From positions 186,001-250,000 of IMG/VR virus record IMGVR_UViG_3300037882_001770: 64,000 nt of DNA; one strand, given 5' to 3'. The position numbers and the translations under genes are program-made. Under the pieces are notes generated by a model that did no database searches, was not told the DNA's origin, and saw only the letters and a program-made list of their open reading frames with translations. Positions 2,339 to 64,000 of this stretch are shown here, piece after piece (positions within the stretch are counted from its first letter, which is position 1; every line of letters starts with the position of its first letter).

Positions 2339-3586
2339 ATGAAAAAAATAGGATTTATTGGGTTGGGTAAACTTGGCCTAGACTGCGCCGAAGTGTTTGC
2401 CGAACATTATGAAGTGCGCGGCTTTGATATTTACCCAAGAACCAGTGACCTGGTAAAAGTTTGTAGCATAGAAGAAACTGTCAATGAAAGTGAATGGATT
2501 TTTTTAGCAGTACCAACTCCTCACTGTGAAGGATACGATGGATCAGTTCCTAGCAGCCATATGGAACCCAAAGACTTTGGACGCGAAGCAGTATTAGCCG
2601 CAATTGACAGTATAAACAAACATGCAACCTCAAGCAAAAAAGTAGTGCTAATCAGCACAGTGTTGCCAGGTACTACTAGACATTATTTTGCTGGACGTCT
2701 TGATTCTGTACACAATTTTTTGTACAATCCTTACTTGATTGCTATGGGCAGTGTAAAGTGGGACATGGTCAATCCAGAAATGATCATGATCGGCACCGAA
2801 GATGGCAATCCCAATGCGCTTGCACAAGAGTTAATCGATCTATATACACCAATGATGAAAAATAGTCCAAGGTATGAAGTTGGTACTTGGGACGAGTGTG
2901 AAGCAATTAAAATTTTCTATAACACATTTATCAGTGCCAAAGTTGGTCTGGCCAATATGATTCAAGATTTTGCTATGAAGATTGGTAATATCAATGTGGA
3001 TGTGGTCACGGATGCATTGGCTCGTAGCACAATGCGTATTATGGGTCCCAAGTATATGACAGCTGGCATGGGCGATGCAGGTGCTTGCCATCCTAGAGAT
3101 AATATTGCTCTACGTTGGCTGGCACAAGAATATGACTTAGGGTACGACATGTTTGATACAATCATGCATGCTCGAGAAATTCAAGCACGTAATCTAGCTG
3201 AGTTTTTAGTAATACAAGCACAAAAAAATAACTTGCCAATAGTAATTCATGGCAAGGCTTATAAACCAGACGTGCCGTATTGTATTGGTAGTTATAGCAC
3301 CCTAATTGGACATTATGTTGAACAGGCAGGACACCGGGTGTCCTATGTTGATCCATTGGCCGACGACCAAACAAATGTAGTATCAAGTCTTGACACCCCG
3401 GCGGTAGTGTTGTTGGCACATAACCGACATGTAACCTATGGATATACTGGACAACCTCAACAAGACATTTTTTATTACGATATTAAGTCTGGCAGCGTTA
3501 TTGTTGATCCGTGGCGCTCAATTTCACAAGACACGAAAGGCATGACTGTTATACACTATGGAAACACACGTAATAACCAAATATAA
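2339..3586 (+). CDS. ugd: UDP-glucose/GDP-mannose dehydrogenase family protein
   Basis: Rossmann GLGKLG, AVPTP, STVLPGTT, catalytic Lys in EAIKIFYN, catalytic Cys in GACHPRD, AYKPD. Confidence 0.9.
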   Translation: MKKIGFIGLGKLGLDCAEVFAEHYEVRGFDIYPRTSDLVKVCSIEETVNESEWIFLAVPTPHCEGYDGSVPSSHMEPKDFGREAVLAAIDSINKHATSSKKVVLISTVLPGTTRHYFAGRLDSVHNFLYNPYLIAMGSVKWDMVNPEMIMIGTEDGNPNALAQELIDLYTPMMKNSPRYEVGTWDECEAIKIFYNTFISAKVGLANMIQDFAMKIGNINVDVVTDALARSTMRIMGPKYMTAGMGDAGACHPRDNIALRWLAQEYDLGYDMFDTIMHAREIQARNLAEFLVIQAQKNNLPIVIHGKAYKPDVPYCIGSYSTLIGHYVEQAGHRVSYVDPLADDQTNVVSSLDTPAVVLLAHNRHVTYGYTGQPQQDIFYYDIKSGSVIVDPWRSISQDTKGMTVIHYGNTRNNQI

Positions 3587-15000: not shown

Positions 15001-15597
15001 ATGCCAAATTTAGTACCCATTGTAGTAGAACAAACCAGCAAAGGCGAACGCAGTTACGATATATATAGTAGACTGCTGCGTGATCGTATTGTAATGCTAG
15101 ATACAGACGTAAACGAGCATACTGCCAGTTTGATAGTGGCTCAGTTGCTGTTTTTAGAAGCAGAAGATCCAGAGCGCGATATTATTTTTTACATCAACAG
15201 CCCAGGTGGCGTAGTCACGGCAGGTATGGCAATTTACGACACTATGAACTTTATTCGCCCGGATGTAAGCACAGTGGTCATGGGCCAGGCATGTAGCATG
15301 GGAAGTTGTTTAGCTCAGGCTGGCGCCGCAGGTAAACGATTTATTTTGCCAAATGCACGTCATATGATTCACCAACCTTCGGGCGGTGCCAGAGGACAAG
15401 CAACAGATATTCAGATTCAAGCACAAGAAATACTCAAAATGAAAAAATACTTAACAGAGATCTATGTCAAGCACAACACTGCTGGCAAAACCTTTGAGCA
15501 GTTGACCGCAGACATGGAACGCGACAACTTTATGAGTGCTGAAGAAGCAGTGGCCTATGGCTTGGCTGATCAGATTATAACTCGACGCGATGCCTAA
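15001..15597 (+). CDS. clpP: ATP-dependent Clp protease proteolytic subunit
   Basis: [46 protein letters not shown]. Confidence 0.97.
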
Positions 15598-16897
15598 TCA
15601 GCAGGTATTTTGCAACACCCCGTGGTATGAATTACATATCTATTGGGACGGTGGCTTTGGTATTTGTTGTCAAGAAAGCCACCGATTGTATAAAGATTCC
15701 ACACAGTACAACATTGCCAACATGAGCATTATGGAATGGTTTAATAGCCAACCTGTGCGAAAATTCAGAACAGACATACTGGGTGACAGTAAAATATCTG
15801 AGTGCCAGCGTTGTTATATTGAAGAACGACACGGCGGCAACAGTCGTAGATTAAAAAGTAATTTAAAAAGCGTTATCTTTACACGTCAGGCCTTTGATGA
15901 AAGTTTTAAACAAAGTCCAGGATATCCGATATTTTCAACCAACGACCAAACTCAAGGCTACACCACGACCCATCCGATTGATCTGCATGTTGACCTAGGA
16001 AACTACTGTAACTTGGCCTGTAAAATGTGCCATGCACAGGCCAGTAGCACAATTGCAAGCCAAGAAGTAAAATGGGGCATTGCCGAAAGCAAACAGTATC
16101 TTGGTACCGACTGGACCAGAAATCCGCAGGTATGGCAATCGTTTAAACAGCAGTTGTTGGAAATACCAAATTTAAAGAATATACACTTCATGGGCGGCGA
16201 AACTCTACTGACCAATCAATTTGAAGATCTAGTGGACTGGTTGACCGAACATCGACGATTTGAAGTGTGTTTTAGTTTTGTGACCAATGGTACAGTGTTT
16301 AAACCAACACTAATCGACAAACTTAAAAAGTTTCAGCGAGTGGGCATAGAAATCAGTATAGAATCTGTAGATGAACACAATGCTTATCAACGTCAGGGCA
16401 CCGATACTGCTCTGGTACTAGCCAACATCAAACAATATCAAACACACTGCAACAACACCAGCATCACCGTGGCATTACGTCCAGCACCTAGCGCATTGAC
16501 CATTGGCTACTATGTGGGATTATTGCAGTTTGCACTAGACAATCAGTTGGTGGTCAAAAGCAATCTGTGTTACGAGCCAAGATTCTTAAATGCAGAAATA
16601 TTACCTGACAAAACAAAATTGCTTTACCAGTCATATTATCAAGAATTTTTAACACAATTTGCCGATGTACAGGCCAATATCGATTACAATGCCAGCGACT
16701 TGAATAACTATCGATTAATCATCAAAGAACATGCAGAAATGTGCCTGGCCATATTGCAAACCCCGGAGCCCAACGATTATCAACATCAAATTGAATGTCT
16801 GGTCAATCACTGTAGAAAATGGGATGATATTTACGGATACGATGCACGAGTATTATATCCTGAATTAACTGAAATATTGGATCTTTATGGCTATTGA
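15590..16897 (+). CDS. radical SAM protein with N-terminal SPASM/Twitch-like domain
   Basis: [16 protein letters not shown]; N-terminal C..PW...CC...C..C. Confidence 0.9.
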
Positions 16898-40036: not shown

Positions 40037-40180
40037 ATGGAACAATATGTATGTGGAGTATGTGGCCACGTTCACAATGAGGCCGTCGAAGGTGTGTTTG
40101 CAGAACTTAGCGACAACTTTCTTTGCCCTGAGTGCGGGTGCTACAAAGATGAGTACGCAGTACAAGAACTAGCAGTATAA
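40037..40180 (+). CDS. rubredoxin (not in ORF track)
   Basis: MEQYVCGVCGHVHNE...F.EL.D.F.CPECG..K..Y, two CxxC motifs; AAGGA RBS. Confidence 0.9.
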   Translation: MEQYVCGVCGHVHNEAVEGVFAELSDNFLCPECGCYKDEYAVQELAV

Positions 40181-40237
40181 GGTCGACACAGTGAGTAAAT
40201 CACTGTATAATTGTTTTTTTATAAAGGAGAAGTAAAG

Positions 40238-40678
40238 ATGGCAAAATCAGTAAAAGGTACCAAAACAGAACACGCATTGAAAGATGCGTTTGCAGGTGAA
40301 AGCAAAGCCAACCGCCGTTATTTGTATTTCGCAAACATGGCTGACGTAGCAGGCGCACCAGATGTTGCGGCAGTATTCCGTTCCACCGCTGAAGGCGAAA
40401 CAGGTCATGCACACGGCCATATGGAGTACTTGATCACAGGTGGTGCAGGCGATCCTGAAACAGGTCTTCCAGCTGGTTCAGTCAAAGAAGCTTTAGAAAG
40501 TGCTATCGCAGGCGAGACACACGAGTACACCGACATGTACCCAGGCATGGCTAAGACAGCCCGCGACGAAGGCTTTGACGAAATCGCTGACTGGTTTGAG
40601 ACTTTGGCTAAGGCTGAGCGTAGCCACGCAAACAAGTTCACCAAGACTTTGGCGGCTCACTTAGAAGACATCAAGTAA
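40238..40678 (+). CDS. rbr: rubrerythrin (di-iron domain only)
   Basis: [38 protein letters not shown]. Confidence 0.93.
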
Positions 40679-40879
40679 TTGGAAACCAGAACAAGAACTC
40701 TTGTCAAGACAATGATCTACAGGTGCTGGGTCTTGCTCAGCACCTATGTGATGCTGTTGGTCACTGGTCAAAGTTTTGCTGAGGCTATTGTTCCTACTAT
40801 CATTATCAACTGTGTCTGGATGACGTCCTACTACCTGTATGACCGACTCTGGGCACACATTGCCTGGGGACGTGAATGA
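40679..40879 (+). CDS. DUF2061-like membrane protein
   Basis: ET..RTL.KT..YR; YY..DR.W..I.WG. Confidence 0.7.
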   Translation: METRTRTLVKTMIYRCWVLLSTYVMLLVTGQSFAEAIVPTIIINCVWMTSYYLYDRLWAHIAWGRE

Positions 40880-41185
40880 ATGCAAGTTGTCACCTGGTCT
40901 GATTGGCTTGAACGCCATATTCCCTACTACCAACAGCAGCAACAGCAAGACCAGTATGGCAATTATCCACCGGAAGCTGTGTTGATAATTGACCCCACAG
41001 ATCGCTATCAACGCTCAGTTCGTCATGGTTATATTGGCAGCACCTGGGAAGCTATGGACAATCTGATTGCGGCGTTAAACTATCGGTCCAAACCAATATT
41101 CTTGGATACTGACACACACCAACGCTGGTATTGGGGTTTTTGGTCACAAAACGATGCCCTGGCAGCTGTAATACGATTGTCATAA
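40880..41185 (+). CDS. hypothetical protein, related to the F..DA..L family
   Basis: C-terminus WGFWSQNDALAAVIRL. Confidence 0.6.
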   Translation: MQVVTWSDWLERHIPYYQQQQQQDQYGNYPPEAVLIIDPTDRYQRSVRHGYIGSTWEAMDNLIAALNYRSKPIFLDTDTHQRWYWGFWSQNDALAAVIRLS

Positions 41186-41200
41186 AATAACCAGTAAATA

Positions 41201-41272
41201 ACTTAACCGGACACAAGATAAGGTGATCGCTGGAGTCCGTAACCAGCACTAAAGAGCCCAGGCTCTTTTTTT
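41201..41272 (+). ncRNA. candidate small pseudoknotted RNA with terminator
   Basis: TAAATA promoter 41195; hairpin GCTGG/CCAGC whose loop GTCCG pairs with upstream CGGAC; terminator AAAGAGC/GCTCTTT+T. Confidence 0.5.
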
Positions 41273-41345
41273 ATTGTCACAATTTTCTCCTTGATTTTTC
41301 ATATATACTTGTGTTACAGTTTTATTACTGAAGGAGGACAAGACT

Positions 41346-41504
41346 ATGAAACAAAGTAAATTGGTTCGTAAAGTGTATCAGGCCTGTATCGACCATGACG
41401 CTGAGAAACAGCAGGAACTTCGCAAGAAGGAATTTGCCAAGATCTTTAAGCACAAGTCCGCAGGCAAATCATTTGACACCAAGTGGACACTAGTAACGGT
41501 GTAA
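41346..41504 (+). CDS. 52-aa basic hypothetical protein (not in ORF track)
   Basis: AAGGAGG RBS; MKQSKLVRKVYQACIDHDAEKQ... Confidence 0.7.
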   Translation: MKQSKLVRKVYQACIDHDAEKQQELRKKEFAKIFKHKSAGKSFDTKWTLVTV

Positions 41505-41549
41505 CAAAAGTGTAATACTTTTTTCTCTGGCATTGCAGTAAATAAGCAC

Positions 41550-42374
41550 ATGCCAGAAAAAACCTACAGATCAATTTTTATTTCGGATGTACATCTCGGT
41601 ACCCGTGACTGCAAGGCCGAAGCTCTCAACAACTTTCTCAAACACAACACCTGCGAAACCCTGTATCTTGTAGGAGACATAATTGACGCATGGAAAATAC
41701 AACAGAACAAGTGGCGATGGAAACAAAGCCACACCAATGTGATACGCAGAGTAATGGGTCATGCCAAACGTGGCACTCGAGTAATTTATGTGGCCGGCAA
41801 CCACGATGAATTTCTAAGACCCTTGATACCTTTGGGCATTGGCTTTGGCCTGATCGAAGTGGTAAATCAAGCAGAACACATAGGCGTGGATGGCCGACAC
41901 TATCTGGTCACACATGGTGATCTGTTCGACGGTATTACTAGACTGGCACCGTGGCTAGCATTTCTGGGTGACAAACTTTATGATTTTGTATTAAACTTAA
42001 ATTCACAGTTCAATGCTGTTCGTCGTAGGTTGCGCTTGGGTTATTGGAGTCTAAGCCGGTATCTCAAATACAAAGTCAAAAAAGCCGCCGATTTTTTGTT
42101 TCAGTTTGAACGTAATCTTGCTACCTACTGCAAGAAGCGTGGCTACGATGGTGTTATTTGTGGGCACATACATCATGCAGAAATCAAAGAGATAGATGGA
42201 ATCATGTACATGAATGACGGAGACTGGGTTGAGAGTATGACCGCCTTGGTTGAACATCATTCAGGAACATGGGAAATCATAACCTGGACCAAGGAGCACG
42301 ACGATGTGGATACTGATACTGTTGGCCGTGAACATAAACAATCCAAACGACGTACCCGGAAGAGTAAGCATTGA
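41550..42374 (+). CDS. LpxH/PlcP-like metallophosphoesterase
   Basis: FISDVHLG, YLVGDIID.W, GNHDE, HGD.FD, ICGHIH, Y.NDGDWVES.TALVE. Confidence 0.9.
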   Translation: MPEKTYRSIFISDVHLGTRDCKAEALNNFLKHNTCETLYLVGDIIDAWKIQQNKWRWKQSHTNVIRRVMGHAKRGTRVIYVAGNHDEFLRPLIPLGIGFGLIEVVNQAEHIGVDGRHYLVTHGDLFDGITRLAPWLAFLGDKLYDFVLNLNSQFNAVRRRLRLGYWSLSRYLKYKVKKAADFLFQFERNLATYCKKRGYDGVICGHIHHAEIKEIDGIMYMNDGDWVESMTALVEHHSGTWEIITWTKEHDDVDTDTVGREHKQSKRRTRKSKH

Positions 42375-42477
42375 GTTTGCCACCGAATCTGAATGTGTGC
42401 GGGCTCAGTCCACTGTGCAGTCGTGGTTGAAATTTGATTCTTTTCGAGTGATTACCAAATGTCAAAAACAATCTTAG
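42304..42477 (+). CDS. 57-aa exported protein with Cys pair (not in ORF track)
   Basis: AAGGAG RBS at about 42291; MWILILLAV...F.TE.EC..A......C. Confidence 0.6.
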   Translation: MWILILLAVNINNPNDVPGRVSIEFATESECVRAQSTVQSWLKFDSFRVITKCQKQS

Positions 42478-43466
42478 TAATAACCGACAATGTTCCAGAT
42501 CAAATCAACGGTGTGGTCACAACTTTCAAAAACCTGGAAAGTCACGCTGTTGACGCTGGGCATTGTGTTGTTTATCTTGATCCCTCTCAGTTTCCTCATT
42601 GTGCTTGCCCTGGGTATCCTGAAGTTCAACTCTGCTGGCCACACGGCATTAGCACGAAGATTAAGGCGATACAGCCGTCGTATATTCACATTGCCACCGA
42701 AGGCCCAGTAGGCCTATTTGCTCGCTGGTGGTGTGAGCGAAATCACATTCCCTACAATACCAGTTATCACACCGACTTTGCCAAGTTTCTAAAGAAAATG
42801 TATCGTGTGCCTGAGTCCGTGACCTGGTGGTATCTGCGTTGGTTTCACAAGAACAGTCACAGGGTGCTGGTTACAACAGAAAGCATACGGCAAGACTTGT
42901 TGACTCGTGGATTCGCCAATCTGCGTGTGTGGACTCGAGGAGTAGACCGAACCATATTTAACAGCACTCATCGTGGTGAAACTGTGGCAGGCGGTCCGGT
43001 ACTGTTAAGTGTTGGTCGGGTAAGTGTTGAAAAAGGCCTAGATGATTTTTGCCGATTAGACATTCCAGGCGCCACCAAAATTGTAGTTGGGGACGGTCCA
43101 TATAGACAAGAATTACAACGCCGGTATCCTGATATCGTTTTTGTGGGAAGTAAACAAGGAACCGACTTGGCTCGGTATTATGCTCAAGCCGATGTGTTTG
43201 TTTTTGCCAGTCGTGCTGACACTTTTGGTGTGGTCAACATTGAAGCATTGGCCTGCGGAACCCCGGTTGCGGCCTATCCTGTTGCAGGACCCAAGGATAT
43301 TGTTGAGCCTGGACTTACCGGATTCTTAAACAACAATTTACAATTAGCAGTGCAACAGTGCTTGACTCTGGATCGTGCGGCGGTAGAAACAGCCAGCCTA
43401 CAATGGACCTGGGCAGAATGTTGGCGTATATTTGAGGACAATCTAGTAGACTGTTCTGTTGCCTAA
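42459..43466 (+). CDS. GT4 glycosyltransferase (Agt/MgtA-like lipid glycosyltransferase)
   Basis: TD...QINGVV.T, HIATEGP.G, SYHT.F, W.RGVD, VGRVS.EK, DTFG.V..EALACGTPVAAYP. Confidence 0.92.
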   Translation: MSKTILVITDNVPDQINGVVTTFKNLESHAVDAGHCVVYLDPSQFPHCACPGYPEVQLCWPHGISTKIKAIQPSYIHIATEGPVGLFARWWCERNHIPYNTSYHTDFAKFLKKMYRVPESVTWWYLRWFHKNSHRVLVTTESIRQDLLTRGFANLRVWTRGVDRTIFNSTHRGETVAGGPVLLSVGRVSVEKGLDDFCRLDIPGATKIVVGDGPYRQELQRRYPDIVFVGSKQGTDLARYYAQADVFVFASRADTFGVVNIEALACGTPVAAYPVAGPKDIVEPGLTGFLNNNLQLAVQQCLTLDRAAVETASLQWTWAECWRIFEDNLVDCSVA

Positions 43467-43574
43467 AAACAACACATTTAAAGCCCGATAAAACGGGCTT
43501 TTTTCTGGGTTTACCAAAAGGTTGACCAAAAATACCAGATCGGCTATAATAGTTGTATAGTTAATAAAAAGGAG
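43457..43574 (+). promoter_or_regulatory. palindrome + terminator + early promoter + RBS module
   Basis: TGTTG-N8-CAACA; AAAGCCCG/CGGGCTTT hairpin; TTGACC 43522-N17-TATAAT 43545; AGGAG. Confidence 0.88.
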
Positions 43575-43911
43575 CCGAAGATGAGCAAACTTACAGCATA
43601 TACTTTAGAGATTTACAAAAAAGACCGCAGAATCAAAGCAGGCCAACGCCTGGTTGAAAAGAAGGACTTCTGCCCAGTTACCCTGGATTACATTCAAACC
43701 GTGGTATCGGACAAGATTGCACAGGGATTTCTAGTGCAGGTTCACGAAACCTTTGTTACCAAGACTAACCTAATGGGTGGTAAGGAGTTTACCGAGCGTT
43801 ATGATACTCCACATTTTTGCTCGCCTGCTAGCGAATCATATTGGAGCATGTAAAACGGTTGACCAAAATTTACCGATTTGCTATAATAGTTGTATAGTTA
43901 ATAAAAAGGAG
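43543..43911 (+). repeat. 32-bp direct repeat covering -10 box to RBS, flanking one gene
   Basis: GCTATAATAGTTGTATAGTTAATAAAAAGGAG at 43543-43574 and 43880-43911. Confidence 0.9.
43581..43853 (+). CDS. hypothetical early protein
   Basis: YK.DRR.K.G.R; NLM.G.EF.E..DTP..CSP.SE.YWSM. Confidence 0.8.
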   Translation: MSKLTAYTLEIYKKDRRIKAGQRLVEKKDFCPVTLDYIQTVVSDKIAQGFLVQVHETFVTKTNLMGGKEFTERYDTPHFCSPASESYWSM

Positions 43912-49470: not shown

Positions 49471-50604
49471 ATGAGTTCTTGGTATTGTGCTTTACCTTTT
49501 AAACATGTGTTTGTGGACAGTACAGGACTTAGTCCTTGTTGCAATACCGTCGGACAATTTGGGCTTGACGTCAGTATAGACGAATACAAATCACATCCTA
49601 AGTTACTAGAATTACAAAAACAATTTCTTGATGGGCGCACTCCTGCTGCATGCTCTGTTTGCTTGCACCAAGAAAAAATTCAAAACAAAAGTATGAGAAT
49701 AGACAGTAATATTGACTACAATCATCGGGTGTTTGATTCTACCGAGTTTGATTTTATACACCTTAGTCAAAGTAACTTGTGTAATTTCAAATGCCGCAGT
49801 TGTAGTCCAAGATACAGCCACGGAATAGTTCAAGAACACAAAAAATATCCCGAATTGTTTGCGGACGCACCTCAACAAAAATTCGTCGAAGTCAATCCTG
49901 ACAATTATAAATGGATTATTAAAAATTTATCAAGTATTAAAAGACTTTTAATAACCGGCGGAGAGCCCACAGTAATGCCAGAAATAAGACATTTGTTTGA
50001 ATTTTTGTTGCAAACACCGCGGCCGCAACCACAACCGTATATTATGATGACAACCAATTGTAGCTGGACTGATAATTTTTGGTATCAAGCAATTGACGGT
50101 ATGTCTAATTTGCATATCACAGCTAGTGTAGATGCAGTAGGAGATGCTGCGCAACTAATAAGACACGGTACTGTTTGGAATCAGGTAGAGCGCAACGTGA
50201 AGTGGTTAGCCCAGCATGCCTCGAGTTTTGATATCAATACGGTAATTAGCAATTTAAATATAAACCATCTTTATGATTTACTTCAATTCTGCAGACAAGA
50301 ACAAATAGCCTCCAAAGTAGAAAATGGAGGGAAACAGGGAGATTTGGGACTACGGCATCAATTTACTATAGCTAACGGTGTCAATGAGATTACCTGTTTT
50401 CCGGATGATCTAAAAACAAAAACACTAAAACATTTGGATCAGTGCCTTGCATTGGATCTAGATCCAGACCAACTGAAATTGATCAAGGGGTTAATTGTAA
50501 CTGTTCAAAATAGTACATACAATCATCAAAAATGGCAAAGTATTGTAGAATATCAAACCAAACTTGATCAAATTCGTGGTGAAAACCATTTGAAACTACT
50601 CTAA
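49471..50604 (+). CDS. radical SAM protein with N-terminal Twitch-like domain
   Basis: C.LPF..PCC..C..C; CNFKCRSC; TGGEP; TN. Confidence 0.9.
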   Translation: MSSWYCALPFKHVFVDSTGLSPCCNTVGQFGLDVSIDEYKSHPKLLELQKQFLDGRTPAACSVCLHQEKIQNKSMRIDSNIDYNHRVFDSTEFDFIHLSQSNLCNFKCRSCSPRYSHGIVQEHKKYPELFADAPQQKFVEVNPDNYKWIIKNLSSIKRLLITGGEPTVMPEIRHLFEFLLQTPRPQPQPYIMMTTNCSWTDNFWYQAIDGMSNLHITASVDAVGDAAQLIRHGTVWNQVERNVKWLAQHASSFDINTVISNLNINHLYDLLQFCRQEQIASKVENGGKQGDLGLRHQFTIANGVNEITCFPDDLKTKTLKHLDQCLALDLDPDQLKLIKGLIVTVQNSTYNHQKWQSIVEYQTKLDQIRGENHLKLL

Positions 50605-60663: not shown

Positions 60664-61580
60664 AAGAACTTTGGGTAGAAAAATATAGACCTAATACTAT
60701 AGACGGTTACGTATTTCGCGACACCGCTCAGCGGGAACAAATTGAAAGCTGGATCAAGGATCGAGCAATTCCACATTTGATATTCAGTGGCAATGCTGGC
60801 ATTGGAAAAACAACACTGGCTAAGATTTTGATCAATCAGCTCGAAATAAACGAATATGATCTATTGGAAATCAATGCCAGTCGAACCAACAGTGTTGACG
60901 ATGTTAGAGTAAAGATTCAGACCTTTGTAGAAACAATGCCCTTTGGCGACTTCAAAATTGTGTTGTTAGACGAAGCAGATTATCTAAGCCCTAATGCTCA
61001 AGCCGCACTTCGAGGAGTTATGGAAACCTATGCGCATACAGCCAGATTTATTTTAACCTGTAACTACCCAACCAAGATTATTCCGGCACTACACAGTCGC
61101 TGTCAGGGCTTTCACATTGAACGTGTTGACATGACTGAATTTACTGCTCGAGCAGCTACAGTGCTGGTTGAAGAATCAATTGAATTTGACCTAGATACCC
61201 TAGATACCTATGTCAAGGCTGCTTATCCAGACCTGCGCAAATGTTTAAATACCTTGCAAATGAATAGTTCGTCGGGTAAACTGTTGGTCCCCAGTGGCGA
61301 TGCCGGCAGTACAGGCGACTGGAAACTGTCGGCAGTTGAATTGTTTAAAGAAGGGCGGATCAATGACGCTCGCAAACTGATGTGTAGTCAAGCTCGGCCC
61401 GAGGAAATGGAAGATGTATTCCGTTGGATGTACGACAACTTGTCGTTATGGAGCAAGGACACCGAAAAGCAAGATCAAGCAATTATTATCATTCGTAACG
61501 GCTTGGTGAATGTGCCAATGGTGGCGGATCAGGAGATCAATCTATCAGCAACTATCACGGAACTTTGCCAGTTGCAATGA
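60660..61580 (+). CDS. sliding clamp loader subunit (RFC/gp44-like AAA+)
   Basis: LWVEKYRP, GNAGIGKTT, INAS, LLDEAD, SRC, DLRK. Confidence 0.95.
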   Translation: MKELWVEKYRPNTIDGYVFRDTAQREQIESWIKDRAIPHLIFSGNAGIGKTTLAKILINQLEINEYDLLEINASRTNSVDDVRVKIQTFVETMPFGDFKIVLLDEADYLSPNAQAALRGVMETYAHTARFILTCNYPTKIIPALHSRCQGFHIERVDMTEFTARAATVLVEESIEFDLDTLDTYVKAAYPDLRKCLNTLQMNSSSGKLLVPSGDAGSTGDWKLSAVELFKEGRINDARKLMCSQARPEEMEDVFRWMYDNLSLWSKDTEKQDQAIIIIRNGLVNVPMVADQEINLSATITELCQLQ

Positions 61581-62773
61581 AAAAGGTAATACCGATACAG
61601 ACAGATCGTGATTATTATTGTTCAAATAAATTTACTTTTTTAAAAATTGATTTTGAAAAACAAACCACGTATAATTGTCATGCAGCCACACCCCATCCAA
61701 TTGATTTTGTCTGGTTAGAAAATAATCCTGGGCAATTGTTTAATACGCCAATCAACATGTCTGAACGTGAGTTGATGTTGGATAATCAACGTAACCCTAG
61801 TTGTGAACAAAACTGCTATCCAGCCGAAGATCGTGGCCAGGTCAGTACTCGAATGTTACAGTCTACTCCGGATCGTCAATACACTGATGTTCTAACTCAC
61901 CCCAAGCTGGTGGACTTTACACTGTTTAGTGAATGCAACCTTACCTGTAGTTATTGTTGCAAAGAATACAGCAGTGCCTGGCGCAATGACTTGTTAAAAA
62001 ACGGATCGTATGATCTGCCAAATTACGCCAATCAAAATCGCATGAAATTGTTGCCTATAGATATTGTGTCTGGTAAGGTAAGTCAAAAAGAAAAAGCAAA
62101 TTTGCCTAAGATAAAATTGCTATTGGAGCAAGTTTACAACAGTCGAGAACATCTTGAAATTTTAACCATCACCGGCGGGGAGCCATTTCTAAACAATCTG
62201 CTACCAGAGATATTAGAAAAATTTAAAACAGTTCCTAGAATTGATTTGTTTACTGGTCTTGGAGTTAACACCGAACGATTTAAAAAAATATTATCTGTGG
62301 TATCACAATACAAAAATATCAACTTGTGCATCAGTGCCGAATCTACAGAAAAAAATTACGAGTTTAACCGCTACGGCATGACTTGGCAAAATTTTCAAGA
62401 ACGATTAAAAATTATTCAAGATCTTGGAATCAAATTTGAATTCCACTGCACTATCTCTAATCTTACAGTGTTAGGGTTCAAGGACTTTTATAAACTCTAC
62501 AAAGATGTCAAACTACATATAGACTTTGTGCATCACCCCGATTTTATGTCAGCCAGCAACTTAGATCCTGCATCCAAACAACAAGTCATAGATGATTTAT
62601 TGCCATATCAAGACGATGTAAAAATCCAACAGATATTACAAACCGTAATCAGCGATCATGTAAATAACGATCATAGGGTAACTATGGCCACGTGGCTAGA
62701 GCAGTTTGCTAGTCGTCGACAACTTGATTTAAATTTATACCCAAAAACTTTTTTAGATTGGCTAAAACAATGA
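61577..62773 (+). CDS. radical SAM protein with N-terminal Cys cluster
   Basis: C..KF...CH...SCEQNC; CNLTCSYC; TGGEP. Confidence 0.9.
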   Translation: MKKVIPIQTDRDYYCSNKFTFLKIDFEKQTTYNCHAATPHPIDFVWLENNPGQLFNTPINMSERELMLDNQRNPSCEQNCYPAEDRGQVSTRMLQSTPDRQYTDVLTHPKLVDFTLFSECNLTCSYCCKEYSSAWRNDLLKNGSYDLPNYANQNRMKLLPIDIVSGKVSQKEKANLPKIKLLLEQVYNSREHLEILTITGGEPFLNNLLPEILEKFKTVPRIDLFTGLGVNTERFKKILSVVSQYKNINLCISAESTEKNYEFNRYGMTWQNFQERLKIIQDLGIKFEFHCTISNLTVLGFKDFYKLYKDVKLHIDFVHHPDFMSASNLDPASKQQVIDDLLPYQDDVKIQQILQTVISDHVNNDHRVTMATWLEQFASRRQLDLNLYPKTFLDWLKQ

Positions 62774-63093: not shown

Positions 63094-63705
63094 ATGAAAT
63101 CGAAATTTAAGAACTTAGATCGTTTAATCCTAACTGATTGTGACGGTGTATGCCTTGACTGGGAGTGGGCCTTTAATGTTTGGATGCAGGAGCATGGATT
63201 TACCGAAGTTGATGGTAGCAAGTTCAGCTACGACATGAGTATCAGGTATAACATACCTAGGGAACAAGTAACCAAGCTGATACGCATTTTTAATGAAAGT
63301 GCCGCAATTGGTTTTCTACCAGCTATGCGTGATTCGGTGTATTACATCAAACGATTGCATGAAGAACACGGATTCCGTTTCCATGCTATCACTAGTCTGA
63401 GTTTAGATCCTAATGCTCAAAAACTACGTGAAATGAATATTCACAAGTTATTCGGTCCGACTGCATTTGAAAGAATTGTATGTTTGGATACCGGTGCACA
63501 CAAAGACGAAGCACTTGAGGAATATGAAGGCACTGGATGCTTCTGGGTAGAAGACAAAATTGAAAATGCCGAAGTTGGATACCGAGCAGGATTAAAAAGT
63601 TTGTTGCTCGAACATGGGCACAACATGAACCATGAGTGCCCATACCCGATTGTGAAGAACTGGAAACAGATCTATCACATTGTTACTGACTACTCCGAAG
63701 CGTAA
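63094..63705 (+). CDS. HAD-superfamily (T4 gp30.2-like) protein
   Basis: LTDCDGV.LDW; ITS; WVEDK; H.HN; promoter 63059/63082. Confidence 0.85.
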   Translation: MKSKFKNLDRLILTDCDGVCLDWEWAFNVWMQEHGFTEVDGSKFSYDMSIRYNIPREQVTKLIRIFNESAAIGFLPAMRDSVYYIKRLHEEHGFRFHAITSLSLDPNAQKLREMNIHKLFGPTAFERIVCLDTGAHKDEALEEYEGTGCFWVEDKIENAEVGYRAGLKSLLLEHGHNMNHECPYPIVKNWKQIYHIVTDYSEA

Positions 63706-64000
63706 AGTTTTAGCACAGAATCAATAATTCTGTGTCGCTGTATGTCCTTGTTGTCCAAATGACAAACTGCGATTCCTTTTACACCCCCTTCCTCTAATCG
63801 TGAACAAAGGTCCATTAAACCATTGTTGCCGCGATTACGATCGGCCTGTTCTACGTCGCCCGTGATTACAATTTTTGAGCCTTCGCCGATACGGGTCATC
63901 AGCATTTTTACCTGATTAGGTGTTGCATTTTGCATTTCATCTGCAATAATAAAACTATTTTTGAATGTGCGGCCACGCATAAAAGCCAATGGTGCAATTT
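63690..64000 (-). CDS. phoH: PhoH-like ATPase (C-terminal part, truncated by window edge)
   Basis: APLAFMRGRTF.N.FIIADEMQN; LMTRIG.GSK.V.TGD..Q.D; DIQRH. Confidence 0.93.
   Translation of the reverse strand, partial: IAPLAFMRGRTFKNSFIIADEMQNATPNQVKMLMTRIGEGSKIVITGDVEQADRNRGNNGLMDLCSRLEEGGVKGIAVCHLDNKDIQRHRIIDSVLKLYASE

What the first reader, a model, noticed from the sequence alone, without database searches (positions are those of the whole stretch)
41499..43466. Phage-encoded PlcP-like/Agt-like pair: possible phosphorus-saving lipid remodelling
Seen: an LpxH-family phosphoesterase next to a GT4 glycosyltransferase, with a 57-aa exported gene overlapping both, and an 11-bp-spaced repeat TGTAAC...TGTAAT (41500/41511) upstream. 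Known: PlcP phospholipase plus Agt glycosyltransferase replace phospholipids with glycolipids under PhoB control in aquatic proteobacteria; Pho boxes are 11-bp direct repeats. Inference: the phage frees membrane phosphate for DNA synthesis or alters the envelope. The Pho box is tentative.
Basis: partly seen in the sequence, partly recalled or inferred. Interest (0 to 1): 0.65.

Follow-up and report, generated by a model that had tools for sequence, protein, structure and literature searches.

The report
Phage operon that swaps membrane lipids
A 317-kb freshwater jumbo phage carries the two bacterial enzymes that remove the phosphate head from membrane lipids and put a sugar in its place, behind what looks like the host's phosphate-starvation switch and together with a phage-only small protein and a small structured RNA, so the virus could probably take phosphorus from its host's membrane.

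Summary
The window is part of a 317-kb IMG/VR jumbo phage.

- **Phosphoesterase (41550-42374).** It is not LpxH: it scores 47 bits against a cut-off of 134. It belongs to the LpxH-like paralogue that proteobacteria keep beside a true LpxH, usually just upstream of a GT4 gene. That is the published plcP-agt arrangement.
- **Glycosyltransferase (42459-43466).** It has every residue shown by mutagenesis to matter in the Pelagibacter Agt-type glycolipid synthase.
- **57-aa ORF.** It is a conserved, phage-specific gene. It is predicted to be a small globular protein, not an exported one.
- **Repeat.** The TGTAAC/TGTAAT repeat is not chance. The same 11-bp-phased repeat plus a TAAATA -10 precedes plcP in 49 of 63 related phages and 8 of 8 phage pstS genes. 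It is rare elsewhere in this genome.
- **Module in relatives.** More than 590 viral contigs carry the phosphoesterase. Of 58 assessable loci, 53 have a glycosyltransferase (GT4 or a swapped-in GT2).
- **Unexpected.** A second such promoter (41167-41200) precedes a single-copy, covariation-supported two-hairpin RNA (41204-41250) with its own terminator.

Biochemistry, PhoB binding and expression are untested.

The parts
41167..41200 (+). Promoter P1. Pho-box-like direct repeat TGTAAT-ACGAT-TGTCAT (41167-41183), an 11-nt spacer, then the -10-like TAAATA (41195-41200). No -35 element.
   Evidence: One of only 4 strict TGTMAY-N5-TGTMAY hits in the 317-kb genome. Sequence read. Six of the 8 phage pstS promoters read show the same repeat / 11 nt / TAAATA layout; the L009 and L028 promoters carry the repeat but no TAAATA at that distance.
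41204..41250 (+). Conserved two-hairpin structured RNA element, a candidate ~68-nt Pho-controlled small RNA when taken together with the terminator that follows it.
   Evidence: In 20 sequences, 96% of cells are paired, 5 pairs show compensatory changes (23 cells), 0 of 500 shuffles reach the score, and slid controls reach 19-52% paired. The MFE fold reproduces the hairpins. It is single-copy in G000 and present 0-1 times in five other 290-525-kb phage records. There is no Rfam match.
41251..41275 (+). Intrinsic terminator T1 after the RNA element (stem AAAGAGCC/GGCTCTTT followed by a T-run).
   Evidence: Terminator scan and fold.
41346..41504 (+). Conserved 52-aa basic protein gene with a strong GGAGG Shine-Dalgarno. 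Its stop codon lies inside the first repeat of P2.
   Evidence: ORF. Matches of 50-87% identity lie in the same position in 37 of the 80 related phage loci. No family hit.
41500..41544 (+). Promoter P2. Pho-box-like repeat TGTAAC-AAAAG-TGTAAT (41500-41516), 22 nt, then the -10-like TAAATA (41539-41544), 5 nt before the ATG. No -35 element and no clear Shine-Dalgarno.
   Evidence: The distance from repeat to TAAATA is 21-22 nt in 34 related loci and 11 nt in 7.
41550..42374 (+). plcP-like gene: an LpxH-like metallophosphoesterase and predicted phospholipase C that releases diacylglycerol and a phospho-head group. Residues ~250-274 form a poorly conserved tail that overlaps the next gene.
42304..42477 (+). 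Phage-specific 57-aa gene between the two enzymes. Predicted small globular strand-strand-helix-strand protein with two invariant cysteines.
   Evidence: No tblastn match at E <= 1e-3 in any of the 80 bacterial plcP loci.
42459..43466 (+). agt-like GT4 glycosyltransferase, a predicted diacylglycerol glycosyl- or glucuronosyl-transferase.
43480..43505 (+). Intrinsic terminator T2 that closes the operon (AAAGCCCG-AUAAAA-CGGGCUUU followed by a U-run).
   Evidence: Sequence. Fold gives -12.2 kcal/mol, z = -3.2. A sigma-70-type promoter for the next gene follows at 43522-43550.

Best explanation
This is a phage copy of the bacterial PlcP-Agt membrane-lipid remodelling pathway, wired to a phosphate-starvation-type promoter.

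**Proposed mechanism (steps marked shown or inferred)**
1. When the infected cell is phosphate-starved, host PhoB~P binds the 11-bp-phased TGT(A/C)A(C/T) repeats, which stand in for a -35 element, and switches on two promoters (inferred).
2. P2 drives the operon plcP-like / 57-aa gene / agt-like (operon layout shown).
3. The PlcP-like enzyme has an LpxH-type metallophosphoesterase core and a two-helix lipid-binding cap (fold shown). It cuts the phospho-head group off host glycerophospholipids and leaves diacylglycerol in the membrane (inferred).
4. The Agt-like GT4 glycosylates that diacylglycerol from a UDP-sugar to a phosphorus-free glycolipid, so the membrane stays intact until lysis (catalytic residues shown; product inferred).
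5. The released phosphate esters feed the phosphate pool for replicating a 317-kb genome, about 635,000 P atoms per copy (arithmetic; the use is inferred).
6. The 57-aa protein is a phage-only cytoplasmic accessory factor. It most likely acts on or with the phosphoesterase, because it stays with that gene whether the downstream transferase is GT4 or GT2 (inferred).
7. P1 drives a small structured RNA that is physically tied to this module in related phages (linkage shown; function unknown).
For: **Phage origin and spread**
- The record is an IMG/VR virus of 317,493 bp, 89% complete, with a terminase hit.
- More than 590 viral contigs carry the gene at up to 89% identity (77-89% in the 80 loci kept), many on 290-525-kb records.

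**Not LpxH**
- It scores 47 and 36 bits against LpxH equivalog cut-offs of 134 and 190.
- Five of five bacterial genomes tested hold both a true LpxH (219-333 bits) and the paralogue (41-57 bits) that is the phage protein's relative.
- In the tree, four of the five true LpxH rows lie across very long branches. The fifth (L165) came from a faulty 663-aa ORF extraction and sits apart as a long branch at the base of the PlcP-like side.
- Twenty-one jumbo-phage proteins form one clade (99/100) within the proteobacterial PlcP-like group, which separates from LpxH at 91/92.

**Enzyme integrity and fold**
- All metal-binding motifs are invariant (D13, H15, D43, N84, H85, H122, H206, H208).
- The AF2 model (pLDDT 87.5) shows the core plus helices 134-161 and 168-196. 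The top 25 PDB fold matches are all LpxH.

**Operon equivalence**
- 54 of 80 closest bacterial loci (50-59% identical) have a GT4 that is 34-47% identical to the phage GT immediately downstream on the same strand. Two more have one nearby on the opposite strand.
- This is the 'type 2' plcP-agt arrangement of PMC4796936. It is also the arrangement of Pseudomonas PA3219-PA3218 (PMC8528852) and Burkholderia BCAL2364-2365 (PMC13691135).

**Glycosyltransferase residues**
- G18, H104, T159-R160, GRVSVEKG (186-193), FASRADTFG (249-257, with Asp254), E262 and W318.
- These correspond to Gly16, His104, Thr162-Arg163, GRVAxEKN, FPSxTDTFG (Asp256), Glu264 and Trp320 of the characterised Pelagibacter enzyme (bioRxiv 10.1101/2021.03.25.437072).

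**Module logic in relatives**
- 53 of 58 assessable related loci have a glycosyltransferase right after the small gene: GT4 in 28 and an unrelated GT2 in 25, in the same slot.

**Link to phosphate**
- A PstS-like gene is directly adjacent in 8 of the 80 related loci.
- In pelagiphage Mosig the homologue lies next to a phosphate ABC-transporter gene.
- All 8 phage pstS-like genes carry the repeat upstream, and 6 of the 8 also have TAAATA 11 nt after it.
- Some relatives have the canonical TGTCAC-N5-TGTCAT.
- 14 of 79 bacterial plcP loci have TGTCAY repeats upstream, against 0.29 expected.
- The motif is rare elsewhere in this genome.
Against: - No enzyme assay, lipid profile, PhoB-binding test or expression data exist. 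No RNA run holding the region was found.
- I could not align the protein directly with an experimentally characterised PlcP, because no named reference sequence could be fetched. Membership therefore rests on paralogue separation, synteny and published identity ranges.
- The commonest phage repeat is TGTAAC/T, which differs from the TGTCAY of E. coli and of the bacterial loci at the fourth base.
- In the window's P2 the repeat sits 22 nt, not 11 nt, from the -10 element.
- This particular phage has no pstS.
- The host is unknown, and the tree does not resolve a donor.
- The role given to the 57-aa protein is a guess. The complex prediction could not be run.
Confidence: 0.7

Rival explanations
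1. The module mainly changes the host envelope rather than supplying phosphorus. Replacing phospholipids with glycolipids could block superinfection by other phages, alter receptors or predator recognition, or stabilise the membrane during the long infection of a jumbo phage.
For: Lipid remodelling is reported to change phage and predator interactions in bacteria, going by the titles and abstracts of PMC9804370, PMC9938194 and PMC9457565 listed. The enzymes would be the same as in the best explanation, so the sequence evidence fits this reading equally well.
Against: The shared promoter motif with pstS-like genes and the physical linkage to them tie the module to phosphate acquisition rather than to exclusion. 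The two benefits are not mutually exclusive.
Confidence: 0.15
2. The repeats are bound by a phage-encoded regulator, or belong to a phage-specific promoter class, and not by host PhoB. The module would then be timed by the phage programme rather than by phosphate.
For: The dominant repeat TGTAAY departs from TGTCAY. The TAAATA -10 and the 21-22-nt spacing class are unusual. Jumbo phages often carry their own transcription factors (own knowledge).
Against: The motif is not a general promoter: it has only 4 strict hits in 317 kb, 2 of them here. Neighbouring genes use TTGACC-17-TATAAT promoters. The motif marks pstS-like genes, the classic Pho-regulon member, in 8 of 8 cases, and some copies match the canonical Pho box.
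Confidence: 0.12
3. The pair is a lipid A / LPS module: a true LpxH plus an LPS-core glycosyltransferase, as current database annotations say.
For: IMG names the homologues 'UDP-2,3-diacylglucosamine pyrophosphatase LpxH' and 'glycosyltransferase involved in cell wall biosynthesis'. GenBank annotates the Mosig and S-SRM01 homologues as LpxH. The only solved relatives are LpxH structures.
Against: The protein scores far below both LpxH equivalog cut-offs. Bacteria with this paralogue also have a separate true LpxH. The tree separates the two. The GT has the Asp-for-Glu catalytic signature and the diacylglycerol-binding residues of the Agt clade.
Confidence: 0.03

Closest known systems
Bacterial PlcP-Agt lipid remodelling operon (Sinorhizobium SMc00171; Phaeobacter MED193_17359; Pelagibacter HTCC7211 PB7211_983/960; Pseudomonas PA3219/PA3218; Burkholderia BCAL2364/2365)
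   Same: An LpxH-like phosphoesterase sits directly upstream of an Agt-type GT4 of ~335 aa, with Pho-box-type repeats upstream. The phosphoesterase is 50-59% identical and the GT 34-47% identical to proteobacterial operon members. All catalytic and substrate-binding residues are kept.
   Different: The module is carried by a jumbo phage. A phage-specific 57-aa gene is inserted between the two enzymes and overlaps both. GT4 is replaced by a 238-240-aa GT2 in about half of the relatives. The repeat is mostly TGTAAY and the -10 is TAAATA. A linked structured RNA is present. There is no dagK as in Burkholderia.
PhoB-regulated phosphate auxiliary genes of phages (pstS and phoA of cyanophages; own knowledge of Zeng and Chisholm 2012)
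   Same: Host-derived phosphate-stress genes on a phage, apparently placed under the host's Pho regulator. Relatives of this phage carry pstS-like genes with the same promoter.
   Different: The target here is membrane lipid phosphorus rather than uptake or extracellular ester hydrolysis. No report of a phage plcP-agt was found in the searched library.
LpxH (UDP-2,3-diacylglucosamine diphosphatase)
   Same: Same fold: a metallophosphoesterase core plus a helical lipid-binding cap. LpxH is the only solved structural relative.
   Different: A separate paralogue with 16-23% identity, scoring below the family cut-offs. It co-exists with true LpxH in the bacterial genomes tested.
Homologues annotated as LpxH in Pelagibacter phage Mosig and Synechococcus phage S-SRM01
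   Same: They fall in the same PlcP-like clade in the tree, at 51% and 35% identity. The Mosig gene lies next to a phosphate ABC-transporter gene.
   Different: No glycosyltransferase and no 57-aa gene follows them.

Membership tests
PlcP (LpxH-like phospholipase C of lipid remodelling) | Intact calcineurin-type metallophosphoesterase motifs (DxH, GD, GNHD, H, GHxH) | tested here: met
   D13, H15, D43, N84, H85, D86, H122, H206 and H208 are invariant in a 50-sequence alignment. Pfam Metallophos and Metallophos_2 match.
PlcP (LpxH-like phospholipase C of lipid remodelling) | A paralogue distinct from true LpxH | tested here: met
   It scores 47 bits against a cut-off of 134. Five of five genomes hold both LpxH (219-333 bits) and the paralogue (41-57 bits). 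The tree separates the two.
PlcP (LpxH-like phospholipase C of lipid remodelling) | Sequence similarity to an experimentally characterised PlcP | not testable with these tools
   No named reference sequence could be fetched, and the order-wide genome search returned no taxon names. Indirect evidence: 50-59% identity to proteobacterial operon members, while characterised PlcPs are 46-47% identical to each other (PMC8528852).
PlcP (LpxH-like phospholipase C of lipid remodelling) | Gene neighbourhood with a non-phosphorus-lipid synthesis gene (agt type) | tested here: met
   The window has GT4 19 nt-overlapped downstream. 53 of 58 phage loci have a GT. 54 of 80 bacterial loci have GT4 downstream on the same strand.
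PlcP (LpxH-like phospholipase C of lipid remodelling) | Phospholipase C activity that releases diacylglycerol | not testable with these tools
   Needs an enzyme assay or lipidomics.
Agt / GTcp clade of GT4 (diacylglycerol glycosyl- and glucuronosyl-transferases) | GT-B GT4 domains, length ~334 aa | tested here: met
   335 aa, with Glyco_transf_4 plus Glycos_transf_1.
Agt / GTcp clade of GT4 (diacylglycerol glycosyl- and glucuronosyl-transferases) | [quoted passage not shown] | tested here: met
   GRVSVEKG 186-193, FASRADTFG 249-257, H104, D254, E262 and G18 (against bioRxiv 10.1101/2021.03.25.437072). At position 254, 16 of 33 phage homologues have Asp and 17 have Glu.
Agt / GTcp clade of GT4 (diacylglycerol glycosyl- and glucuronosyl-transferases) | Diacylglycerol-binding residues (Thr162, Arg163 and Trp320 of GTcp) | tested here: met
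   T159, R160 and W318 are conserved in all or nearly all of the 33 phage GT4s.
Agt / GTcp clade of GT4 (diacylglycerol glycosyl- and glucuronosyl-transferases) | Makes MGlc-DAG and/or GlcA-DAG | not testable with these tools
   Needs heterologous expression and lipid mass spectrometry.
LpxH (true) | Score above the NCBIfam equivalog cut-off | tested here: not met
   NF003743: 47.3 against 134. TIGR01854: 36 against 190.35.
Pho box (PhoB binding site) | Direct repeats with 11-bp periodicity resembling CTGTCAT | tested here: met
   TGTAAC-N5-TGTAAT at 41500 and TGTAAT-N5-TGTCAT at 41167. Relatives have TGTCAC-N5-TGTCAT. The fourth base is A rather than C in most phage copies.
Pho box (PhoB binding site) | Replaces the -35 element, about 10-11 nt upstream of the -10 | tested here: inconclusive
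   P1 and 6 of the 8 phage pstS promoters have exactly 11 nt. The window's P2 and 34 relatives have 21-22 nt, one helical turn more.
Pho box (PhoB binding site) | Found upstream of known Pho-regulon genes | tested here: met
   8 of 8 phage pstS-like genes. 14 of 79 bacterial plcP loci, against 0.29 expected.
Pho box (PhoB binding site) | Bound by PhoB~P and induced by phosphate starvation | not testable with these tools
   Needs EMSA or footprinting and reporter assays.
   The hydrophobic run is only ~9 residues, with no positively charged N-region. AF2 (pLDDT 94.4) places residues 2-10 as a strand of a compact strand-strand-helix-strand domain.

The most novel reading that the evidence does not exclude
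Freshwater jumbo phages carry a self-contained, PhoB-triggered 'phosphorus-mining' regulon. It consists of a PlcP-type phospholipase, an interchangeable glycolipid synthase (GT4 or GT2), often a PstS-like protein, a phage-invented 57-aa partner protein with a new fold, and a single-copy structured small RNA of a class not in Rfam that is transcribed from the same type of promoter. The RNA and the small protein would be new regulators that tune membrane cannibalisation during infection.
Probability: 0.35. Interest if true: 0.8.

Novelty: new variant of a known kind. Interest (0 to 1): 0.68.

Why it matters
Phosphorus limits many lakes and oceans, and a jumbo phage needs a great deal of it. Known phage phosphate genes act on uptake (pstS, phoA). 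A phage-borne PlcP-Agt module would add the host's own membrane as a phosphorus source and would change the lipid make-up of infected cells.

The genes are common: more than 590 viral contigs carry the phosphoesterase. They are currently annotated as LpxH and 'cell wall' glycosyltransferases, so surveys count them as LPS genes.

The conserved promoter motif gives a directly testable case of host PhoB control in phages of heterotrophic bacteria. The linked small protein and RNA are new, tractable parts.

Tried and rejected
There is therefore no test of binding.
- **Fetching a characterised PlcP by taxon.** The order-wide genome search (401 Burkholderiales genomes, 200 with a match at 48-59% identity) returned no taxon names. 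A first attempt with a locus as the centre was a parameter error.
- **Fold search** of the 57-aa model against the PDB gave no match at E <= 0.001.
- **Family scans** (Pfam, NCBIfam, PHROGs) found nothing for the 57-aa and 52-aa proteins.
- **Rfam** found nothing credible in 40600-43900.
- **Sequencing-run search** found only DNA runs, from lake, freshwater and unspecified metagenomes, holding 5-12% of the sampled words, and no RNA run. Read laying was therefore not used, and there is no expression evidence.
- **Small-genome Burkholderiales as donors with a TGTAAY Pho box.** Their loci have 54-64% G+C and TGTCAT-type repeats. The phage variant is not simply copied from them.
- **A sigma-70 -35/-10 reading of the P2 region** was considered and rejected. 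TGGACA at 41484 lies 21 nt from TGTAAT, which is too far.
- **The GT2 of relatives** could not be assigned to a specific family. Its best NCBIfam score is 59-67 bits against a cut-off of 182.
Full report
**1. What is in the sequence**

The window is bases 186001-250000 of a 317,493-bp IMG/VR virus record, 89% complete by CheckV.
- It has a terminase-C hit and a PhoH gene.
- Genes are densely packed, mostly on one strand, at ~43% G+C.

- 41550-42374, 274 aa
- 42304-42477, 57 aa
- 42459-43466, 335 aa

Family and signal evidence:
- Pfam calls the first ORF a calcineurin-like metallophosphoesterase. It calls the third a GT4 glycosyltransferase, with Glyco_transf_4 and Glycos_transf_1.
- The 57-aa ORF has an AAGGAG Shine-Dalgarno 7 nt before its ATG. 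It overlaps its neighbours by 71 nt and 19 nt.
- A strong intrinsic terminator closes the unit at 43480-43505. A TTGACC-17-TATAAT promoter for the next gene follows.

**2. The phosphoesterase is the PlcP-type paralogue, not LpxH**

- *Family scores.* NCBIfam's two LpxH equivalog models give 47 and 36 bits, against cut-offs of 134 and 190.
- *Library-wide search.* An exhaustive search of 50%-identity cluster representatives finds 924 relatives at E <= 1e-30. The best are 53-56% identical.
- *Named genomes.* The closest relatives are 50-59% identical. They come from Burkholderiales (Limnohabitans, Acidovorax, Variovorax, Rhizobacter), Alphaproteobacteria and Pseudomonas.
- *Two paralogues in one genome.* In five of five genomes tested, a true LpxH (219-333 bits) lies elsewhere. 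The phage protein's relative scores 41-57 bits, like the phage protein itself.
- *Tree.* A maximum-likelihood tree puts four of the five true LpxH rows across very long branches.
  - The fifth, L165, came from a faulty 663-aa ORF extraction. It sits as a long branch at the base of the PlcP-like side.
  - All 21 jumbo-phage proteins sampled form one clade (99/100) in an unresolved position among the proteobacterial PlcP-like sequences.
  - The Mosig and S-SRM01 phage homologues lie in the same large group. GenBank annotates both as LpxH.
- *Integrity and fold.* All metal-binding motifs are invariant.
  - The AlphaFold2 model (pLDDT 87.5) shows the phosphoesterase core plus a two-helix insertion at 134-161 and 168-196.
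  - Its 25 best PDB matches are all LpxH, at 16-23% identity.
  - The C-terminal tail (about residues 250-274) has low confidence. It is the part overlapped by the 57-aa gene.

I could not fetch a named, experimentally characterised PlcP, so direct identity to one is untested. Published characterised PlcPs are 46-47% identical to one another (PMC8528852).

**3. The glycosyltransferase is Agt-like**

- In 54 of the 80 closest bacterial loci, a GT4 that is 34-47% identical to the phage GT lies immediately downstream of the phosphoesterase on the same strand.
- That is the commonest ('type 2') plcP context described for marine bacteria (PMC4796936). It is also the arrangement of Pseudomonas PA3219-PA3218 (PMC8528852) and Burkholderia BCAL2364-2365 (PMC13691135).
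- The Pelagibacter enzyme GTcp (334 aa) and Agrobacterium Agt define a GT4 clade with three features (bioRxiv 10.1101/2021.03.25.437072):
  - the motifs GRVAxEKN and FPSxTDTFG;
  - a His104-Asp256 dyad;
  - diacylglycerol-binding Thr162, Arg163 and Trp320.
- The window's protein has the matching residues: GRVSVEKG (186-193), FASRADTFG (249-257, Asp254), H104, T159-R160, E262, W318 and G18. They are conserved in the phage and bacterial homologues.

**4. The 57-aa gene**

- It is intact and conserved, with six invariant positions including two cysteines, in 51 of 58 assessable related phage loci.
- It has no match at E <= 1e-3 in any of the 80 bacterial loci.
- AlphaFold2 with 33 sequences gives pLDDT 94.4 and a strand-strand-helix-strand domain. 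The N-terminal hydrophobic run is strand 1.
- No PDB fold matches it.
- It is therefore a phage-specific, probably cytoplasmic, small protein. 'Exported' is not supported.
- It accompanies the phosphoesterase whichever transferase follows, so I infer that it works with the phosphoesterase.

**5. The module in relatives**

- At least 594 IMG/VR stretches encode a relative, and the 80 kept are 77-89% identical. Many lie on 290-525-kb records.
- Among 58 distinct loci with enough downstream sequence:
  - 23 are small gene plus GT4;
  - 24 are small gene plus GT2;
  - 5 are GT4 without the small gene;
  - 1 is GT2 without the small gene;
  - 5 have no glycosyltransferase.
- The GT2 is 238-240 aa (Pfam Glycos_transf_2, also over threshold for Glyco_transf_21). 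It occupies the same overlapping slot. This non-orthologous replacement suggests that selection acts on 'a glycosyltransferase after the phospholipase'.
- A PstS-like PBP_like_2 gene abuts the module in 8 of the 80 loci.
- One Burkholderiales genome has a PstS 76% identical to a phage PstS-like protein about 1.1 kb from its own plcP.
- In Mosig the homologue is divergent from a phosphate ABC-transporter gene.
- The window's own genome has no pstS.

**6. The Pho box**

- *Window sequence.* It reads TGTAAC-AAAAG-TGTAAT (41500-41516), then 22 nt, then TAAATA (41539-41544), then 5 nt, then the ATG.
- *Conservation upstream of plcP.* In 63 distinct upstream regions of phage homologues:
  - 49 carry TGT[AC]A[CT]-N5-TGT[AC]A[CT] with at most 1 mismatch, against 0.24 expected;
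  - 47 have TAAATA within 25 nt of the ATG;
  - the repeat-to-TAAATA distance is 11 nt (7 cases), 21 nt (23 cases) or 22 nt (11 cases), that is, one or two helical turns.
- *Independence from context.* The motif persists where the upstream gene differs. Several copies match the canonical TGTCAC-N5-TGTCAT.
- *pstS-like genes.* All 8 have the repeat upstream, and 6 of the 8 follow it after 11 nt with TAAATA. L009 and L028 have no TAAATA at that distance.
- *Rarity.* In the 317-kb genome the strict motif occurs 4 times, against about 1 expected. Two of those are here.
- *Bacterial loci.* 14 of 79 bacterial plcP loci have TGTCAY repeats upstream, against 0.29 expected.

This is the behaviour expected of a Pho box. 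The A at the fourth position, the 22-nt spacing of P2 and the lack of any binding data are the caveats.

**7. An unexpected linked RNA**

- *Promoter and layout.* The second strict motif hit (41167-41183; TAAATA at 41195-41200) lies just upstream of a 47-nt element (41204-41250). A terminator follows at 41251-41275.
- *Structure.* The element folds into two hairpins with conserved loops.
- *Covariation.* Across 20 distinct copies, 96% of cells pair and five pairs show compensatory changes (23 cells). No shuffle reaches the score, and slid controls reach 19-52% paired.
- *Copy number.* A covariance model finds one copy in this genome, one each in three other jumbo-phage records, and none in two.
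- *Position.* Every copy lies beside a plcP, GT or pstS gene, either upstream of plcP or just after the stop codon of the GT or pstS-like gene.
- *Second module in one record.* In the 524-kb record the copy sits at a second plcP-GT4 module. There it follows a 231-aa gene that has a canonical TGTCAC-N5-TGTCAC / 11 nt / TAAATA promoter.
- Rfam has no match.

I read the element as a Pho-type-promoter-driven small RNA or UTR element of unknown function.

**8. Mechanism and alternatives**

- *Best reading.* PhoB-dependent expression of a PlcP-type phospholipase C and a diacylglycerol glycosyltransferase converts host phospholipids into glycolipids. The released phosphate supports replication of a very large genome, 2 x 317,493 = about 635,000 P atoms per copy.
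- *Envelope-modification benefit.* Possible, and not exclusive of the phosphate reading.
- *Phage-encoded regulator for the repeats.* Less likely.
- *Database reading (LpxH plus an LPS transferase).* Contradicted by the paralogue and residue tests.
- *Habitat.* Only lake, freshwater and unspecified metagenome DNA runs hold related sequence, at small word shares, so the habitat call is tentative. No RNA run was found.

**9. Novelty**

The searched library has no report of a phage plcP-agt module. The pathway and Pho-controlled phage auxiliary genes are both known, so this is a new variant of a known kind. The added parts (small protein, RNA, GT swapping) are new.

Noticed in passing
window 41204-41275 (promoter 41167-41200): A single-copy, covariation-supported two-hairpin RNA with its own Pho-box-like promoter and terminator. 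In related phages it always sits next to plcP, GT or pstS genes. It has no Rfam family.
   Followed up: partly
window 41346-41504: A conserved 52-aa basic protein gene between the RNA terminator and the plcP promoter, present in 37 of the 80 related loci. It has no family hit.
   Followed up: partly
window 40037-40678: A 47-aa ORF with two CxxC pairs, which looks like a rubredoxin (read from the sequence only), directly upstream of a rubrerythrin gene (Pfam Rubrerythrin, E = 2.8e-25). This may be a phage oxidative-stress pair.
   Followed up: no
window 2339-3586: A gene of the UDP-glucose/GDP-mannose dehydrogenase family (PHROG 'UDP-glucose dehydrogenase', E = 5e-87). It could supply UDP-glucuronate to an Agt-type enzyme, but it lies 39 kb away and has no strict Pho-box-like motif.
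   Followed up: no
window 15590-16897, 49471-50604, 61565-62773: Three radical-SAM-domain genes in a single 64-kb stretch of the phage.
   Followed up: no
window 63702-64000 (continues beyond; G000 249702-250322, minus strand): A PhoH gene (249 bits). No PstS-like gene was found in this phage genome.
   Followed up: partly
L010:6910-7626, L030:6910-7632 and 23 other related loci: GT4 is replaced by an unrelated 238-240-aa GT2 in the same overlapping slot after the 57-aa gene. The GT2 could not be assigned to a specific family.
   Followed up: partly
L181 (G301:C3:26500-32300): A Burkholderiales genome of ~1.6 Mb has a PstS 76% identical to the PstS-like protein of a related phage (L064), about 1.1 kb from its own plcP. 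This hints at the host lineage.
   Followed up: no
L175 (G408:C1:81500-88500) and L046: The 524-kb viral record carries two plcP modules about 100 kb apart. One has GT2 and the small gene. The other has GT4 without it, followed by solute-binding-protein and dicarboxylate-symporter genes. The record might be a chimera.
   Followed up: partly
L001 (Mosig 94129-94866) and L173 (S-SRM01 210536-211240): The 'LpxH' genes of two cultured phages fall in the PlcP-like clade, so they are probably misannotated. The Mosig gene is adjacent to a phosphate ABC-transporter gene.
   Followed up: partly
L011:7902-9920 and L013:7913-9967: Right after the GT, a 672-aa phage gene in L011 has a CHASE2 sensor domain and an adenylate/guanylate cyclase domain. 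A similar-sized 684-aa ORF sits in the same position in L013 but was not scanned.
   Followed up: no
L048:2069-2959: A RimK-like ATP-grasp gene is inserted between the 57-aa gene and the GT4 in one relative.
   Followed up: no
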